64,000 nucleotides of DNA from Phallusia mammillata (lineage: Eukaryota): the NCBI GenBank assembly GCA_965637545.1, contig OZ281498.1:12710001-12774000 (forward strand), read 5' to 3'. Under the pieces are notes generated by a model that saw only the letters and a list, made by a program, of their open reading frames with translations, had not been told where the DNA came from and ran no database searches. Of the stretch, positions 30,386 through 40,094 are shown one piece after another. How positions within the stretch are numbered: position 1 is the first letter of the stretch; every line of letters starts with the position of its first letter. A program made the position numbers and the translations under genes.

Positions 30386-33300
30386 TCACTTGAATTGGTT
30401 GTACAACACAACAAGTTTTCCATAGCGGGATTTGCAAACAAGGTCATCAAGGTTGTCACCATCAACGTCCATCAGCATCAAGCTGCTTTGCTGATCGATG
30501 CAAAATTCAGGAAAACTCCCTTTCCAGCTTAAATCTTCAGTGAATCCGTCAGCATTAGAAAAGGACACACGAATACTTCTGAAATAGATAAAAACAATGA
30601 ACTCAATTGGCCTAAATGCAGTGATTTGTTTCAGAATATTTTTAGAATAAACTATCCTCTTTTTAGTATGACTTAAAGTGCAAACGAACTAAAATGAGTG
30701 AAGAAAAGGTAAATAACCCACATCTGACCTTTATAAACTTTTTCCCGTTTTTAGTTCTTTTATTAGGGTGGTATTGTAACATATTGTTTGCCTATTTTTA
30801 CCTGCAATAGTACCAACTTTATAGAGCTCTTCTGCCAATTGTGTAGTTAATATTATGCCTGGCAGCAACATGCCTTTACATGCAGTGTAAAACCTTATCA
30901 CACAATATTTAACATTTTTACTGCCAAAACTTTACTTACCCTCTGCTTGGGCATTGACACAGTAAATCGTCAAGTCCATCTCCATTCAAGTCACCAGTTA
31001 CCAGAATTCCAGGCCCATTAAATGCTTTGCAAGTGGTCACAGGCTGCTGCCAGTCAACCGATGAAAATCTGCCGCTAGATGACGCCAGATACACAACCCT
31101 GAAAAACAGCTCGTTAATCTGGTTGTGGTTGAAAAAAAAACATTCAGTTAAATCAAAGCATTATTTTAAAATACTAACGTCCAGTGATCAGCATAATAGC
31201 ACAACAGATCTTCTCTGCCGTCGCCATTAAAATCTCCAGAATAAATACTTCCGTATCTGCAAATGTGTTCAGTTGAATTCCATTGCTCTTGGCCGAAGAT
31301 CAAGGTTTCTGGTAACAAAATAGGAGATTAAAAGACACTGTGAAATCTGAAAATTATTCAATATTAAAACTCACGTGACACGGAAGTGCAGTCATTCGTG
31401 TTGCAGGTTGATGATTGCCAAGCCTGGCCACTACATCCATTGTCTTTTGAAAATCCACCGGTACACTGTCTTTTTCTAAAACATTAGGTTCAATTAAAAC
31501 TCAAATTCTGCAGTGTCAAAAGTATAAATTGTGCAGGTATAATTTTATGCACTGAGACGTTTTTGCTAAATACCTCCATCTCACTCCACTTCCGCATGAT
31601 TTTGAGCAGTCTCCCCATGTTTGCCAGGATTCCCAAGTTCCTGTATTGGGATTCGTTGTCGTTGCGATTAGACATCTTTTCATTGCACAACTTTCTGTTT
31701 CCACCACCGAACCATTGCACTTCTTACTGATGCGTCCGTCACCCAAGCGACAAGTGCGTGTCCTAGTGTAAACTCCATTGCCACATGTTACCGAACAAGT
31801 GCCCCAAGGACTCCATTCGCTCCAGGTAGCTAAAAATAACAAATACGCGTTTTAAAGGACATGTTTATGAAGTAATAGTGACATTACAAAAACATGTTCT
31901 TAAAATTGGCAAGGCTTAGCGAAATTTTTATGTTGTAAAATTACATGTATCTCCCAAACATATCATTAACAAACAGAGGTGGCTGAAAAATTGGGAGATA
32001 TGTAATGTACACATAAATTACCTTGTAAAACTGATACAGGATTCACTGTAGCTGGACACTCGTACATTTTATTGATCTGACTGCTGTCATGTTCGGTGAA
32101 GCCATCGCGCTGAGATTGGACTGGTTTGTTGGTCGATCTTATCAAAATGGTTGGTTGAAGGTTTTTGGAAAACGCATAACCTCCATAATGCATCAGAGAG
32201 CCGATATCGTAGGGAGAACCAAAGGAGTTGACTGAGTTTCGAACGTTGAAATTATTTTCCTTTCCTATTGTGATTCAAGAGTTTGAAAACAAAGCATAAT
32301 AATATTGCATTGTAGATCAGTGCCATTTGTTGCTACCCTTAGCAATCCAGATATGGTACAATATATATATATTGACTACATTAGCGCGTATTGGGTCATG
32401 ATAATGTTCTTTATTTAGTAGCATATACTGTTCGGTCTTATCTACCTGCCATAACATTATCGATTTGTATGATAACATGTTCATCTCTATCCGGCCGAGA
32501 TTGTTCATGCCAGAATCCTAAAGCATGCATAAGCTCATGTTGTACAACTCCCTTCCATTCACAACCATTGCCTATGGATACATCTTGTCGGCCACCTCGA
32601 CGTCCAATGTACGACCTATAATACAAACTAGTATTTCCATTGGTGTCATGTAGAAAACCGGTAATTATTAGTGCTTTGTTTTGAACATTTGAATATATAT
32701 GTATCGTTATTTGCTTACTCACCAGCATCCTCCTCTAGAAACAAAATGAATATAATCTTCTTCATCGCTTCTTTCTACAAAATCTACGCAAGTACTATCG
32801 CCGTACGCTGATATCGCTTCTGAAATAGCTTCTTTAGCTTTGCTTGCTGTTGCAAAATAACGTATGGCGTCATGATAAACTGACGATTGTTTGGCGGAAA
32901 AAGAATCATACTTACACATTCCATCGCTAATTACATACGGGACCTTGACACGACCTTGCAAACGATTTTCATTCCAACGCAACAAACCCAATGAAGCCGC
33001 GTCTTGTGCACCGCTTGGCACTTTGAGATAATTCTGCATTTAAAAAACTTTACTTAATGTTTTGGTTTTGAAAAACATTCGTTATAGTCGAAAAACCAAT
33101 AGGAGGCGCATATATGCAGAAAATCCCAAGTTTGAGTACACTTTTTCAAATCAGTAGTTTTCTTAAAACTCAAAAAAGAAACTGTACGGTCGAAAAGGTA
33201 CATAAATATTAATTAGTTTGATACAAATACTTAAACCTAATAAATTCTTAAATTTACTCTTATTAGAAAGTCGTGATTAGATTTGACCTGTGATGTAACA

Positions 33301-33872
33301 CATAAGATAACTTTATTTTGTTTTATTTACCGTTTCAAATACAGGAACATCTTTAGCATCATATTTAATGTCCTCTTCGAAAAATCCACTTGATTTGCAA
33401 CTGCAACTTGTCTGACATCCGGCTTCGTCCATTTCAAAACCCATCACTTCACAATCGTTGGTGCATTGTGTCACATCAAAAGTGCAATCAACACTGCTTT
33501 GATGGTGAACCATACCTGTAAAGTATAACAGCAAATTTCCAAATCAGAAAAAAAATCTTTATCACAATTACTAAATTTATGCTAAAACTTGCCTGTGCTG
33601 ATTTGGAATTTTTTTAGTAAGAAATTTGAAATTTACGAGCTTACCCATGCAGAAGTTAATATCTATTGGACTTGGAGTATCAGCTCCGCTGGATTTCCTT
33701 AATTGCAAAGTTCTATAAACTTCATCACATACATCATAGCGCGTTGGGTTACCTGCAGAAAACAAAAATTATATAATTCAAACTTTACACAAACCCTAAG
33801 AGTAATAAAATATTCACCTAATACCGAACCAACTGCCAACACAGCAAAGATGCAATAGATGTAGGAGGACAT
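30386..33872 (-). CDS. Secreted astacin (M12A) metalloprotease A, about 613 aa: signal peptide, antistasin-like Cys module, astacin domain, 2x TSP1, 3x FG-GAP/VCBS-like repeats
   Basis: 12 exons (minus strand): 33872-33818, 33752-33645, 33515-33331, 33033-32916, 32846-32723, 32615-32446, 32264-32022, 31829-31574, 31475-31375, 31308-31179, 31098-30940, 30578-30386. Total 1842 nt, in frame. Zinc motif HELMHALGFWHEQSRPDRD, Met-turn SLMHY, TSP1 WSEWSPWGTCSVTCG, repeats GDFNGDGREDLLC / GDLNGDGLDDLLC / DVDGDNLDDLVC. An upstream in-frame ATG at 33902 is an alternative start. Confidence 0.93.
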
Positions 33873-38100: not shown

Positions 38101-40094
38101 AAGATCAAATCAAAGCTGTTTACAAATGTTCGGTAACACCAACAACACGTACGTTTTAGAATAGCTTAGCACGATACGTGAAATCTAAAACATACCAATT
38201 CACTAATAGTAAACTGAAGCTTTCAGCACGACTAAATTAGTTTGTGTTTTTGGTTTTGCGATTTAATGGCATCCTCAATTCTTACGAACTTGAATCGTTT
38301 GTATTGAGCACACGTTGGTTTAGGACAGGTTCTGTACAAGCACAGTTTAATACCAAATCACTTAGTTGGAACGTTTCCTAACCGTTTTGTATCACTTGAA
38401 ATGCGGTCGTTTTGATTTTCATGACCGCTCCAAAGTCTGGTTTAGTTGTGTGCTTTTAACCAATCATGAAAGCATTTTTAACAAAACATTAAAACATAGT
38501 TAAAACATAGTGTCATTTATTGTGGACGAAATTATGTAAACAGTATAGGCTTCAGATTTCACCATCCAGATTGGAATTTTCAAACTATCGTATTCATACA
38601 CTTTTTTAAAAGTCTTGGCCTTTACTCAGGGACTGCTGATAAAATCTTCACAATACAATATTCACAGCTATGTGGAGCAGCTGGGGCGTATGGGGATCAT
38701 GTTCAGCCACATGCGGGGGCGGAAGGCAATCTAGAAGCCGGGTATGCGAGTTAGATGGCAAAGAACAAAGCAGTGGATGTGAAGGGTCCAAAACACAAAC
38801 ACAAAGTTGTGAGACAGAAGTTTGTTTAACACCAACCACAACATCTTCAACTACGCCTCCTACAACAGCACCAACTGTGGGATCGTGGGGAACATGGAAA
38901 ACGTGGGGAAGTTGTTCAAAATCTTGTGGCACAGGCTACAGATGGAGGTACAGATATCGTAATAAATAAAGTTGCGGTAGTTTTATAAACACATTAAAAA
39001 AGTGACGAATGTTTCAACACAGTAACTCCCTTGGGGCAATGTTTACCAAAATCATCCTATACCCCATATTTCGACCAATTGTTGCTACGTCGATGCTGTC
39101 TAACAAAATACAAATACGTTTGGAAAATGAGAAAAATGCTATGTTCTCTGCTTGGTTATAGTTATGATTCACATCATCCAAAGCACAAAAAAGACCCATA
39201 AGGGTAAATTGATACGTGTATTTCAGACGTCGAGTTTGTGTCGGTGGTCAAGCTGGTCGTGGTGGCTGCAAAGGCTCTGCATGGCAAGCCCACAAATGCA
39301 ACACTCAACCATGCCTTCCTACAACAGGTAGACAAGACCAAGTTTGTGATAACTTTAAAAAAACAAAAAAACAGTGTAAGTTTGTTTGTTTGTTGTTTCT
39401 AGAGCCCGATCTATTCTCGGGAATTGAATGGTCTTCAAGGCAATCAATTTGCAAGTATCGCAACTTAGTCTCTGGGGATTTTAATGGTGATGGTCGGCAG
39501 GACATTCTTTGTTACCAAGCAAATCACTGGACGTAAGTTTTACTGTCATATAGGTTGCTGGAGTTCATTTGATACATAAACGTACGGTTTGTTTAATAAT
39601 TTTTGTCGTAAATTCCAACTAATTTATATTAAAATCGAAGCATTTTCCTTCACCTAAAATGTAATTTCATCATATAATTTCAGCATTTTATATTTGGCAA
39701 CAAGCAGTGGTCAATTTCCATTCAAGTCTTGGCAGCGTTATTTACCAACATGCAAAACATTCGTTGGATCAAATAATCTTATCGCTGGAGATTTAAATGG
39801 GGATGGACGAGATGACTTGCTTTGTCAAAACACGGCGACAGGGTAAGTGTTATTCGTGTTCCTATGTGTAACCATTTGTGATTGAATGTTTTAACTGACA
39901 GAAAAATTCGCACCACCTTTTCTACGAACTTAGGATTTGAATCCGAAGTTTCGTGGGAAGGGGATTTAAAATCTTTCTGCTCGGGTCGTTTTGATAAGTT
40001 GATGCTGAGAGATGTGGATGGTGATGGTCTCGACGATCTGATTTGCAAATCTTTTAATGGAAATCTTAAAGTGAAGTACAACCAGTTTGAGTAA
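35151..40094 (+). CDS. Secreted astacin (M12A) metalloprotease B, about 617 aa; inverted paralogue of astacin A with the same architecture
   Basis: 12 exons: 35151-35205, 35263-35373, 35728-35912, 36168-36285, 36346-36469, 37563-37732, 37921-38148, 38668-38947, 39227-39327, 39403-39532, 39684-39842, 39902-40094. Total 1854 nt, in frame. HEFMHALGFWHEQSRPDRD, SVMHY, two TSP1 repeats with a Thr/Pro linker, three D-x-[DN]-G-D-G repeats. Nine of 12 exon lengths are identical to astacin A. Confidence 0.94.
36623..37459. mobile_element. hAT (Charlie-like) non-autonomous DNA transposon, 837 bp, in astacin B intron 5
   Basis: TIRs CAGTGGTCGTCAACCT / AGGTTGAAGACCACTG (15/16 match), a perfect 8-bp TSD TTATAGAC (36615-36622 and 37460-37467), and subterminal GGGGTCGC repeats. 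Confidence 0.92.

What the first reader, a model, noticed from the sequence alone, without database searches (positions are those of the whole stretch)
30386..40094. Head-to-head astacin pair with an unusual four-module architecture
Seen: two divergently transcribed 12-exon paralogues with ATGs 1.28 kb apart and identical intron phases. Each is signal peptide + antistasin-like module + astacin + 2x TSP1 + 3x FG-GAP-like repeats, and both keep complete zinc-binding and Met-turn motifs. Established: astacin-TSP1 fusions are known in invertebrates. I do not recognise the combination with an antistasin-like prodomain and an FG-GAP tail from any characterised family. Inference: a co-regulated secreted protease system that targets matrix or glycans, for example in tunic remodelling, hatching or defence.
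Basis: partly seen in the sequence, partly recalled or inferred. Interest (0 to 1): 0.75.

Follow-up and report, generated by a model that had tools for sequence, protein, structure and literature searches.

The report
Tunicate Tast-family astacin gene pair
Two neighbouring genes facing away from each other encode secreted zinc proteases of the tunicate "Tast" family, which is already linked to fertilisation. Their two odd-looking extra modules are present in the published Ciona Tast proteins too, but the papers I could search do not mention them.

Summary
Two divergent 12-exon genes sit at 33902-30386 (minus) and 35151-40094 (plus). All introns are GT-AG, the intron phases are identical (1,1,0,1,2,1,1,2,1,2,2), and exon-by-exon protein identity is about 52%. 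Each encodes a signal peptide, a propeptide with an antistasin-like 6-Cys knot and an Asp-switch motif, an intact astacin domain, 2 TSP1 repeats and 3 Cys-bracketed FG-GAP_3-like repeats.

The claim that no characterised family has this combination does not hold. The Ciona robusta Tast1 and Tast2a-d sequences printed in the supplement of PMC6353882 show, by eye, the same propeptide knot and the same three-repeat tail. The Tast papers list only TM or signal peptide, astacin and TSP1. The genome is almost certainly a tunicate, because a GT2 exon lies about 3 kb from a GH6 exon on the same strand. At least six further astacin loci in it pair the propeptide knot with tail-repeat matches.

An 18-kb contig from another animal carries a collinear orthologue. 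Co-regulation has no support: one RNA run holds a spliced 1970-nt contig of gene A, and none of four runs holds gene B exons.

Earlier scan notes had already flagged the knot on other DNA of this genome.

Verdict: new members of a known family, with two modules that the literature I searched does not describe.

The parts
33818..33902 (-). Gene A exon 1: ATG at 33902 and the signal-peptide-like N-terminus
   Evidence: best 11-residue hydropathy 2.72. The RNA contig in X5 covers 33816-33905 and splices to exon 2. A TAA lies two codons upstream in frame.
33645..33752 (-). Gene A exon 2: first part of the propeptide, with a conserved Cys pair
   Evidence: Covered by the X5 RNA contig at 33645-33750. 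48% identical to the orthologue in L010.
33331..33515 (-). Gene A exon 3: antistasin-like 6-Cys knot (33397-33486) followed by the Asp-switch FFEEDI (33367-33384)
   Evidence: Pfam PF02822 at 22.5-22.8 bits against a cut-off of 21.2. Six Cys, F, G and the switch Asp are invariant in 8 paralogues and the orthologue. Motif coordinates.
32916..33033 (-). Gene A exon 4: end of the propeptide and start of the mature astacin domain
   Evidence: Pfam Astacin on the surrounding open frame.
32723..32846 (-). Gene A exon 5: astacin domain
32446..32615 (-). Gene A exon 6: astacin zinc site, HELMHALGFWHEQSRPDRD at 32483-32539
   Evidence: Pfam Astacin 88.4 bits; motif. The X5 contig continues with this exon's own letters (loose end at 37701).
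32022..32264 (-). Gene A exon 7: astacin C-terminal part, Met-turn SLMHY at 32185-32199
   Evidence: Pfam Astacin 52.7 bits. The nearest solved chains are meprin beta, fish hatching enzymes and BMP1/TLL1.
31574..31829 (-). Gene A exon 8: TSP1 repeat 1, a Thr-rich linker and the first half of TSP1 repeat 2
   Evidence: Pfam TSP_1 63.1 bits in two stretches; motifs.
31375..31475 (-). Gene A exon 9: second half of TSP1 repeat 2
   Evidence: homologous to B exon 9, which matches TSP_1 profile positions 20-49.
31179..31308 (-). Gene A exon 10: tail repeat 1, DFNGDGREDLLC at 31199-31234
   Evidence: Pfam FG-GAP 20.6 bits, below the cut-off. The repeat profile A4 scores 67.3 bits here, but this exon is one of the rows A4 was built from. 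Motif.
30940..31098 (-). Gene A exon 11: tail repeat 2, DLNGDGLDDLLC at 30957-30992
   Evidence: Pfam FG-GAP_3 23.5 bits, below the cut-off.
30386..30578 (-). Gene A exon 12: tail repeat 3 (DVDGDNLDDLVC at 30434-30469) and the stop codon
   Evidence: A profile of this exon with B's hits 1243 proteins at E<=1e-3, and 81 of the 83 best short ones are Pfam FG-GAP_3. The language-model search scores 0.97 to FG-GAP_3 clusters.
33903..35150 (.). Spacer of 1248 bp between the two start codons. It holds a dispersed short repeat at about 34059-34253.
   Evidence: Contigs only 92-95% alike from all four runs lie on 34059-34253. No test of promoter activity was possible.
35151..35205 (+). Gene B exon 1: ATG at 35151 and the signal-peptide-like N-terminus
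   Evidence: hydropathy 2.99.
35263..35373 (+). Gene B exon 2: first part of the propeptide, with a Cys pair
35728..35912 (+). Gene B exon 3: antistasin-like knot (35757-35846) and Asp-switch FLEEDI (35859-35876)
   Evidence: Pfam Antistasin 14.9 bits, below the cut-off. All six Cys are kept. 11 matches in the own genome: the two genes themselves and nine beside other astacin exons.
36168..36285 (+). Gene B exon 4: end of the propeptide and start of the astacin domain
36346..36469 (+). Gene B exon 5: astacin domain
   Evidence: Pfam Astacin 30.8 bits.
36616..37459 (.). Dispersed 844-bp repeat inserted in intron 5 of gene B. Not part of the gene's function.
   Evidence: 766 first-look candidates in the genome; 40 scored copies are 84-98% identical. 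Its transcribed copies are what brought in the RNA runs.
37563..37732 (+). Gene B exon 6: zinc site, HEFMHALGFWHEQSRPDRD at 37639-37695
   Evidence: Pfam Astacin 93.7 bits.
37921..38148 (+). Gene B exon 7: astacin C-terminal part, Met-turn SVMHY at 37986-38000
   Evidence: Pfam Astacin 54 bits.
38668..38947 (+). Gene B exon 8: TSP1 repeat 1, a Thr/Pro-rich linker and the first half of TSP1 repeat 2
   Evidence: Pfam TSP_1 56.2 bits in two stretches.
39227..39327 (+). Gene B exon 9: second half of TSP1 repeat 2
   Evidence: TSP_1 profile positions 20-49, 19.3 bits.
39403..39532 (+). Gene B exon 10: tail repeat 1, DFNGDGRQDILC at 39477-39512
   Evidence: Pfam FG-GAP 21.0 bits, below the cut-off.
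39684..39842 (+). Gene B exon 11: tail repeat 2, DLNGDGRDDLLC at 39790-39825
   Evidence: Pfam FG-GAP_3 27.4 bits against a cut-off of 26.9. It is the only PF13517 match in the whole genome at E<=0.01.
39902..40094 (+). Gene B exon 12: tail repeat 3 (DVDGDGLDDLIC at 40011-40046) and the stop codon

Best explanation
Genes A and B are an old inverted local duplicate of one gene of the tunicate Tast family (tunicate astacin plus thrombospondin type 1 repeats). They are of the secreted, signal-peptide type, not the type II membrane type found on Ciona sperm.

Shown here:
- Both are intact 12-exon genes.
- Gene A is transcribed and spliced as modelled.
- The module order is signal peptide, a roughly 115-residue propeptide, astacin, two TSP1 repeats and three FG-GAP_3-like repeats.

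Inferred mechanism:
- The protein is secreted as a zymogen. The Asp of the F-x-E-E-D-I motif, held in place by the disulfide-rich antistasin-like knot just before it, blocks the zinc site, as in other pro-astacins.
- Cleavage near the A-A-S / G-A-S stretch in exon 4 would free the mature N-terminus.
- The TSP1 repeats and the three calcium-binding propeller-type repeats would hold the enzyme on an extracellular glycoprotein or matrix substrate.

By analogy with Ciona and Halocynthia Tasts, the likely settings are digestion of the egg coat at fertilisation or remodelling at metamorphosis. Which setting applies to this pair is unknown.
For: - Gene models, phases and identity.
- Domains. Motifs.
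- RNA: in X5 a 1970-nt contig at depth 99 has the exon 1-exon 2 joint 33750/33816 with no mismatches, and exon 6 starts at contig position 624, the sum of modelled exons 1-5 plus 3 nt.
- Tast definition and known biology: (PMC6353882, PMC11673157).
- Ciona Tast sequences with the same knot, switch and three-repeat tail, read by eye.
- Tunicate genome: a GT2 exon at C3:28483890-28484498 and a GH6 exon at C3:28480812-28481030 lie on the same strand. To my knowledge this is the tunicate cellulose-synthase arrangement.
- Family in this genome: nine further knot exons, each beside astacin exons, and tail-repeat matches downstream of astacin at six of those loci.
- Orthologue with collinear exons 2-12 in another animal: L010.
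- Tail is the FG-GAP_3 class.
Against: - The match to Ciona Tasts was read by eye from a supplement. No alignment score or tree was computed, because those sequences have no reference here.
- The signal peptides were judged from hydropathy only.
- The activation site, calcium binding, substrate and tissue are all inferred.
- Three propeller repeats cannot close a propeller alone, so how the tail folds is open.
- Gene B has no RNA support in the four runs laid.
Confidence: 0.75

Rival explanations
1. One reading: a previously unseen four-module protease family, forming a co-regulated two-gene system driven by a shared bidirectional promoter.
For: The genes are head to head with 1248 bp between their ATGs. 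No paper in the library combines astacin with FG-GAP, and none combines Tast with antistasin.
Against: The Ciona Tast sequences show the same modules. At least six further astacin loci in this genome pair the knot with tail-repeat matches. In X5, gene A is a depth-99 contig while no contig lies on gene B exons in any of four runs. The spacer holds a dispersed repeat. The orthologue contig shows no divergent partner within 4.2 kb upstream.
Confidence: 0.1
2. The three-repeat tails are half-propellers that pair, A with A or A with B. They would form a six-bladed, lectin-like calcium-binding propeller, so the enzymes would act as dimers.
For: The closest repeat proteins usually have 5-7 repeats, and the bacterial astacin-like relatives have six. 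A model of one of these (P0038) resembles seven-bladed integrin-type propellers such as the Psathyrella GlcNAc lectin, UmbA4 and CRTAC1. All tunicate copies seen have exactly three.
Against: Nothing was folded for the tunicate tail, because the joined model was left out. The bacterial model is poor (mean pLDDT 57.9, TM 0.33-0.47). No interaction test was run. Gene A is expressed without detectable B, which argues against an obligate heterodimer.
Confidence: 0.25
3. The tail, or a protease-plus-tail cassette, moved between bacteria and tunicates by horizontal transfer.
For: In this genome the repeat is found only next to astacin genes. The best outside matches are bacterial: P0013 has a lipoprotein-type N-terminus and bacterial neighbours, and the atlas taxa are Actinomycetota and Myxococcota. 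11 of 83 of the best matches carry an astacin-type zinc site directly before six such repeats. Tunicates are known to hold a bacterial-type cellulose synthase.
Against: The catalytic exons look like ordinary animal astacins: the nearest solved chains are meprin, hatching enzymes and BMP1. They match the bacterial proteins only over about 25 residues at the zinc site. The repeats are short and motif-dominated, so similarity is weak evidence. Each repeat is its own exon, and TSP1 repeats lie between protease and tail. No tree was made.
Confidence: 0.1
4. One of the two copies is a decaying duplicate without function.
For: Gene B has no RNA contig in four runs and carries a young 844-bp repeat in intron 5.
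Against: Both reading frames are complete, all splice sites are canonical, and every catalytic, Cys and calcium-site motif is kept at about 52% identity. That fits long-term selection on both. The runs were few and small, and the tool states that a hole in contigs proves nothing.
Confidence: 0.05

Closest known systems
Tast proteins of ascidians: Ciona robusta Tast1 and Tast2a-d (PMC6353882) and Halocynthia roretzi HrTast1-5 (PMC11673157)
   Same: All are tunicate astacins followed by 2-3 TSP1 repeats. In the printed Ciona sequences, by eye, I see the same 6-Cys knot plus F-E-G-D-V/I switch before the catalytic domain and the same three Cys-bracketed D-x-N/D-G-D repeats at the C-terminus. Sizes are similar: HrTast2b is 630 aa and HrTast2c 661 aa. 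The genes occur in local clusters. HrTast4 also has a signal peptide and two TSP1 repeats.
   Different: The five sperm-surface Ciona Tasts have a 50-100-residue cytoplasmic N-terminus and a membrane anchor (type II). A and B have a short cleavable-looking signal peptide. Ciona Tast2 proteins have a long Thr/Pro-rich linker and three TSP1 repeats. Orthology to any named Tast was not computed.
Astacin family M12A in general (crayfish astacin, meprins, BMP1/tolloid, fish hatching enzymes, ovastacin)
   Same: They share the zinc site, the Met-turn, the cysteines of the catalytic domain and a propeptide with an Asp switch. The nearest solved chains are meprin beta, hatching enzymes and TLL1/BMP1.
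   Different: Those carry CUB, EGF, MAM or TRAF modules or none. None is described with an antistasin-like knot in the propeptide or an FG-GAP tail in the papers I could search.
Uncharacterised bacterial lipoproteins with an astacin-type zinc site followed by six Cys-bracketed FG-GAP_3 repeats (P0013, P0038, P0054, P0121 and others)
   Same: The repeat subtype is the same (W..FC......L..GD.NGDG..DL.C), placed C-terminal to a metzincin with an HExxHxxGFxHEQxRPD site and an SxMNY turn.
   Different: They have six repeats, not three, with no TSP1 and no knot. They are bacterial. The catalytic domains are only distantly alike.
Integrin-type FG-GAP propellers with lectin function (Psathyrella velutina lectin, Streptomyces UmbA4), and CRTAC1
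   Same: They belong to the same repeat class with calcium-binding D-x-D/N-G-D-G loops. They are the best structural matches of the bacterial relative's repeat region.
   Different: They are seven-bladed closed propellers with no protease attached. The comparison was made through a low-confidence model of a bacterial relative, not of the tunicate tail.
Antistasin-type serine-protease inhibitors (Pfam PF02822)
   Same: The 6-Cys spacing is the same, and all 8 tested copies match PF02822, best E 2.1e-5.
   Different: Here it is a single unit inside a metalloprotease propeptide, not tandem inhibitor domains. No solved relative was found by sequence. Inhibitory activity is untested.

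Membership tests
Tast (tunicate astacin and TSP1 repeat proteins) | Astacin metalloprotease domain | tested here: met
   Pfam Astacin up to 93.7 bits on exons 5-7 of both genes; zinc site and Met-turn present.
Tast (tunicate astacin and TSP1 repeat proteins) | Two or more TSP1 repeats C-terminal to the astacin domain | tested here: met
   Two TSP_1 stretches in exon 8, completed by exon 9, in both genes.
Tast (tunicate astacin and TSP1 repeat proteins) | Encoded in a tunicate genome | tested here: met
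   GT2 and GH6 exons lie about 3 kb apart on one strand of C3. To my knowledge GT2 followed by GH6 is the tunicate cellulose-synthase arrangement. The species name was not available.
Tast (tunicate astacin and TSP1 repeat proteins) | Sequence kinship with named Tasts (shared propeptide knot and three-repeat tail; common clade) | tested here: inconclusive
   The shared modules were seen by eye in the sequences printed in the supplement.
Tast, sperm-surface subgroup (CiTast1, CiTast2a-d, HrTast1, HrTast2b, HrTast2c, HrTast3c) | N-terminal transmembrane anchor (type II) and no signal peptide | tested here: not met
   A and B start 10-15 residues before a short hydrophobic run, and an in-frame stop lies just upstream of A's ATG. 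The RNA contig begins 3 nt before A's ATG with genomic letters. They resemble HrTast4, the signal-peptide type.
Tast, sperm-surface subgroup | Expression in testis and presence on sperm | not testable with these tools
   Run labels are coded and tissues unknown.
Astacin family, MEROPS M12A | HExxHxxGFxHExxRxDRD zinc site, SxMHY Met-turn and a propeptide Asp switch | tested here: met
   All three were found in both genes. The switch Asp is invariant in 8 copies. Its role as a zinc ligand is inferred from the family.
FG-GAP / FG-GAP_3 repeat proteins | Match to the Pfam repeat models | tested here: inconclusive
   Only B exon 11 passes the cut-off, at 27.4 against 26.9; the other five repeats score 14-23.5 bits. 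Indirect support is strong: 81 of the 83 best matches to the tail profile are PF13517, and the atlas score is 0.97.
FG-GAP / FG-GAP_3 repeat proteins | Enough repeats (usually seven) to close a beta-propeller | tested here: not met
   There are exactly three repeats in A and B, in the third tailed gene of this genome (on L006, window genome contig C2), in the orthologue L010 and in the Ciona Tasts.
Antistasin family (PF02822) | Pfam match and the 6-Cys pattern | tested here: met
   A is over the cut-off and B below it. All 8 family copies match at E<=1, best 2.1e-5, and the six Cys are invariant.
Antistasin family (PF02822) | Inhibition of serine proteases | not testable with these tools
   This needs a biochemical assay.

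The most novel reading that the evidence does not exclude
The whole Tast family, including the sperm-surface enzymes studied in Ciona and Halocynthia, carries two conserved modules that have not been described. One is an antistasin-like knot that clamps the Asp switch of the propeptide. The other is a three-blade calcium-binding FG-GAP_3 half-propeller. The half-propeller would have to pair, giving dimeric enzymes, to form a lectin-like propeller that recognises egg-coat or matrix glycans. It would share ancestry with a bacterial family of astacin-like lipoproteins that carry six such blades.
Probability: 0.2. Interest if true: 0.6.

Novelty: new member of a known kind. Interest (0 to 1): 0.33.

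Why it matters
For genome annotation, this is an ordinary pair from an expanded tunicate protease family.

The useful by-product concerns the Tast proteases, which are candidate sperm lysins for the ascidian egg coat and are needed at metamorphosis. They have been described only as astacin plus TSP1. The sequences show two more conserved modules. One probably governs latency. The other, of a calcium-binding lectin-like repeat class, could explain how the enzymes find their substrate. Both ideas can be tested directly with recombinant domains.

Tried and rejected
- **Joined model left out.** All searches were exon by exon, by reference. The steps left out were a full-length architecture search, folding the three-repeat tail, and a complex prediction for A-tail with B-tail.
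- **Computed alignment to Tasts left out.** The Ciona and Halocynthia Tast sequences exist here only as text in a supplement and have no reference, so that comparison is by eye.
- **The search for homologous proteins not used.** Its length window, 0.55-1.75 times an exon, cannot reach proteins of about 600 aa.
- **The one search of protein representatives went to the exon-12 profile.** Its top 150 hits were swamped by multi-repeat proteins, mostly metagenomic (those examined are bacterial), so no animal orthologue of full length surfaced. Only the 62-aa fragment P0111 did, and it led to L007-L010.
- **First two own-genome searches.** They failed because my coordinates were out of frame, and were corrected.
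- **Own-genome search with exon 12 alone.** It suggested that only these two genes have the tail. The repeat profile then showed more copies, so uniqueness was rejected.
- **Rfam on 30000-40500:** nothing.
- **PDB by sequence with the knot exon:** nothing.
- **RNA runs.** They were picked up through repeats inside the query, not through gene B exons. The absence of B is therefore weak evidence.

Full report
**What is there**

Open frames on both strands of 30.3-40.2 kb, read together with splice sites, give two complete genes.
- Gene A runs on the minus strand from the ATG at 33902 to the stop at 30388-30386. It has 12 exons and encodes 623 aa.
- Gene B runs on the plus strand from the ATG at 35151 to the stop at 40092-40094. 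It has 12 exons and encodes 617 aa.
- All 22 introns are GT..AG. The intron phases are 1,1,0,1,2,1,1,2,1,2,2 in both genes.
- Exon-by-exon identity sums to 322 of 622 aligned positions, about 52%. It peaks at 77% in the zinc-site exon.
- The start codons are separated by 33903-35150, which is 1248 bp.

**Modules**

Pfam was run on single exons by reference.
- **Exon 3:** Antistasin. A scores 22.5 bits, over the 21.2 cut-off. B scores 14.9, below it.
- **Exons 5-7:** Astacin, up to 93.7 bits.
- **Exons 8-9:** two TSP_1 repeats. The second is split between exons 8 and 9.
- **Exons 10, 11, 12:** weak FG-GAP / FG-GAP_3 matches. Only B exon 11 passes the cut-off, at 27.4 against 26.9.

One search places the motifs in window coordinates.
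- The knot has the spacing C-x6-C-x3-C-x11-C-x3-C-x-C.
- An F-(F/L)-E-E-D-I motif follows the knot directly. It corresponds to the Asp switch of pro-astacins.
- The zinc site is HExxHxxGFxHExxRxDRD and the Met-turn is SxMHY.
- Both TSP1 repeats carry WxxWxxW..CSxxCG.
- Each tail repeat carries D-x-(N/D)-G-D-(G/N)-x-x-D-(L/I)-(L/I/V)-C.

Both N-termini are short hydrophobic stretches (best 11-residue hydropathy 2.7 and 3.0). An in-frame stop lies two codons before A's ATG. I read these as cleavable signal peptides, but no signal-peptide predictor was available.

**Transcription**

Four small runs, RNA by guess, were laid on 33645-39644.
- In X5 a 1970-nt contig at depth 99 lies on 33816-33905 and 33645-33750 with no mismatches. 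It skips the 65-nt intron 1 of gene A at a GT..AG joint.
- The same contig cross-matches B's exon 6 from contig position 623. That equals 3 nt plus the summed lengths of modelled exons 1-5 of A.
- Beyond the cross-match the contig continues with A's own exon-6 letters.
- Its length equals 3 + 1869 + 3 + 95 nt, as expected for the 12-exon model with a short 3' UTR.
- No contig lies on any gene B exon in X1, X2, X5 or X10. X10, from the same study as X5, lacks gene A as well.

These are assembled contigs, and the tool states that holes prove nothing. This shows that A is a real, sample-specific mRNA. It gives no support for co-expression with B.

**What the tail is**

- A two-row profile of exon 12 (A1) was searched against 1.84 billion representatives. 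It found 1243 proteins at E<=1e-3, mostly with 5-7 matched stretches each.
- Of the 83 best that are 720 aa or shorter, 81 are Pfam FG-GAP_3. Eleven also match Astacin and seven match Peptidase_M10.
- Their consensus repeat, W..FC......L..GD.NGDG..DL.C.....G, is the repeat seen in A and B, Cys pair included.
- The language-model atlas gives the same answer: score 0.97 to FG-GAP_3 clusters, mostly Actinomycetota and Myxococcota.
- One subgroup has a lipoprotein-type N-terminus, an astacin-type HExxHxxGFxHEQxRPD site with an SxMNY turn, and six such repeats. P0013 sits among bacterial genes.
- A model of P0038 is of low overall confidence (mean pLDDT 57.9), although the repeat region is better. 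Its best structural matches are integrin-type propellers: the Psathyrella GlcNAc lectins, UmbA4, CRTAC1 and integrin alpha.

The tail therefore belongs to the calcium-binding FG-GAP_3 propeller class. It has only three blades.

**It is a family trait, not a peculiarity of this pair**

- Besides A and B themselves, the exon-3 knot matches at nine other places in the genome, each beside astacin exons.
- An alignment of eight copies keeps all six Cys, an F, a G and the switch Asp. All eight match PF02822.
- With exon 12 or exon 11 alone, the tail seemed limited to A, B and one gene on C2.
- A ten-row repeat profile (A4) then found further copies. They lie 5-14 kb downstream, on the same strand, of astacin exons at C2:4.92, C2:4.98, C2:5.93, C2:12.99, C1:22.6 and C3:18.64 Mb. 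Further repeat matches at C3:0.715 Mb lie about 28 kb from the nearest astacin exon (C3:0.745 Mb), so I do not count that locus.
- The C2:12.99 Mb gene (L006) has the knot, one degenerate TSP1 and three tail repeats. Its zinc site reads H-L-V-M-H and its turn reads S-I-M-H-F, so it is a pseudo-protease.
- A 62-aa fragment from the big search (P0111) led to JGI contigs from another animal. On L010, exons 2-12 are collinear with A and B at 36-81% identity. There is no divergent partner in the 4.2 kb upstream.
- A, B and this orthologue are roughly equidistant from one another, so the A/B duplication is old.

**What it is called**

- The genome holds a GT2 exon and a GH6 exon about 3 kb apart on one strand. 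To my knowledge that is the tunicate cellulose-synthase arrangement, so the host is a tunicate.
- Tunicate proteins with an astacin domain and TSP1 repeats were named Tast in Ciona robusta (PMC6353882). Five are on sperm, metalloprotease inhibition blocks fertilisation, and knockouts fail at metamorphosis.
- Ten more were listed in Halocynthia roretzi (PMC11673157). Some have an N-terminal membrane anchor, and one (HrTast4) has a signal peptide and two TSP1 repeats.
- Both papers list only TM or signal peptide, astacin and TSP1. Neither contains the words FG-GAP, propeller, antistasin or cysteine-rich.
- Only two unrelated papers in the library hold both astacin and FG-GAP. None of the 11 papers with astacin and antistasin puts the two in one protein in the passages I read.
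- The Tast sequences printed in the Ciona supplement show a C..FD(I/V)..C...C..G(Y/F).....C..(S)C.C knot before the astacin domain, followed by G-F-E-G-D-V/I.
- After the TSP1 repeats they show three repeats such as GDFNGDRNVDVMC, GDFNGDAMSDVVC and DIDGDNKWDLMC in Tast2a. Tast1 has more degenerate versions.

This is the same four-module plan. I compared it by eye only. A computed alignment was left out because the printed sequences have no reference here.

**Mechanism (inferred)**

The proteins would be secreted zymogens. The knot-stabilised propeptide places the switch Asp on the zinc, and cleavage early in exon 4 activates the enzyme. The TSP1 repeats and the calcium-binding blades tether it to an extracellular glycoprotein substrate. 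The three-blade tail may pair to complete a propeller, but nothing here tests that.

**Verdict**

The novelty claim is not. These are two further members of the Tast family, of the secreted type. The modest new point is that the family's propeptide knot and three-blade tail are conserved from Ciona to this genome and are not described in the literature I could search.

Earlier notes of this scan had already flagged the knot on this window and on another piece of this genome (s1-375494, s1-388505). They had also flagged the three blades (s1-375521) and a pseudo-protease (s1-375559).

Noticed in passing
window 36616-37459 (intron 5 of gene B): A dispersed 844-bp non-coding repeat. There are 766 first-look candidates in the genome, and 40 scored copies are 84-98% identical. 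Transcribed copies appear in all four runs. It explains why this intron is 1093 bp while the same intron in gene A is 107 bp.
   Followed up: partly
window 34059-34253 (spacer between the two genes): A short dispersed repeat. Contigs that are only 92-95% alike, from all four runs, lie on it, and similar contigs lie on 36633-36691. It is not specific to this locus.
   Followed up: no
L006 (window genome contig C2:12985000-12994999, minus strand), about L006 3373-8965: A third gene with the knot, astacin and three-repeat plan. It has one degenerate TSP1. The catalytic Glu is replaced (H-L-V-M-H) and the Met-turn Tyr is replaced (S-I-M-H-F), so it is a likely pseudo-protease.
   Followed up: partly
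P0013, P0038, P0054, P0121 and others; L011 1302-3116: An uncharacterised bacterial family of lipoproteins. They have an astacin-type zinc site and Met-turn followed directly by six Cys-bracketed FG-GAP_3 repeats. About a fifth of the best matches to the tunicate tail carry some metzincin domain.
   Followed up: partly
Window genome contig C3:28480812-28484498, minus strand (outside the window): GT2 and GH6 exons lie about 3 kb apart on one strand. This is the cellulose-synthase arrangement known from tunicates, which identifies the kind of animal.
   Followed up: partly
L010 (JGI sample 3300001539, 18,110-bp contig); also L008 and L009 from two other JGI samples: Animal DNA, with introns and about 39% G+C, filed under metagenome samples. 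It carries a collinear orthologue of genes A and B. The source animal was not identified.
   Followed up: partly
Window genome, about 98 Astacin-matching exons, with clusters on C4:6.77-6.81 Mb, C4:17.30-17.33 Mb, C6:19.13-19.22 Mb, C1:25.39-25.48 Mb and C7:4.68-4.96 Mb: A large expansion of astacin genes in tandem clusters. Only some of them carry the knot and the tail.
   Followed up: no
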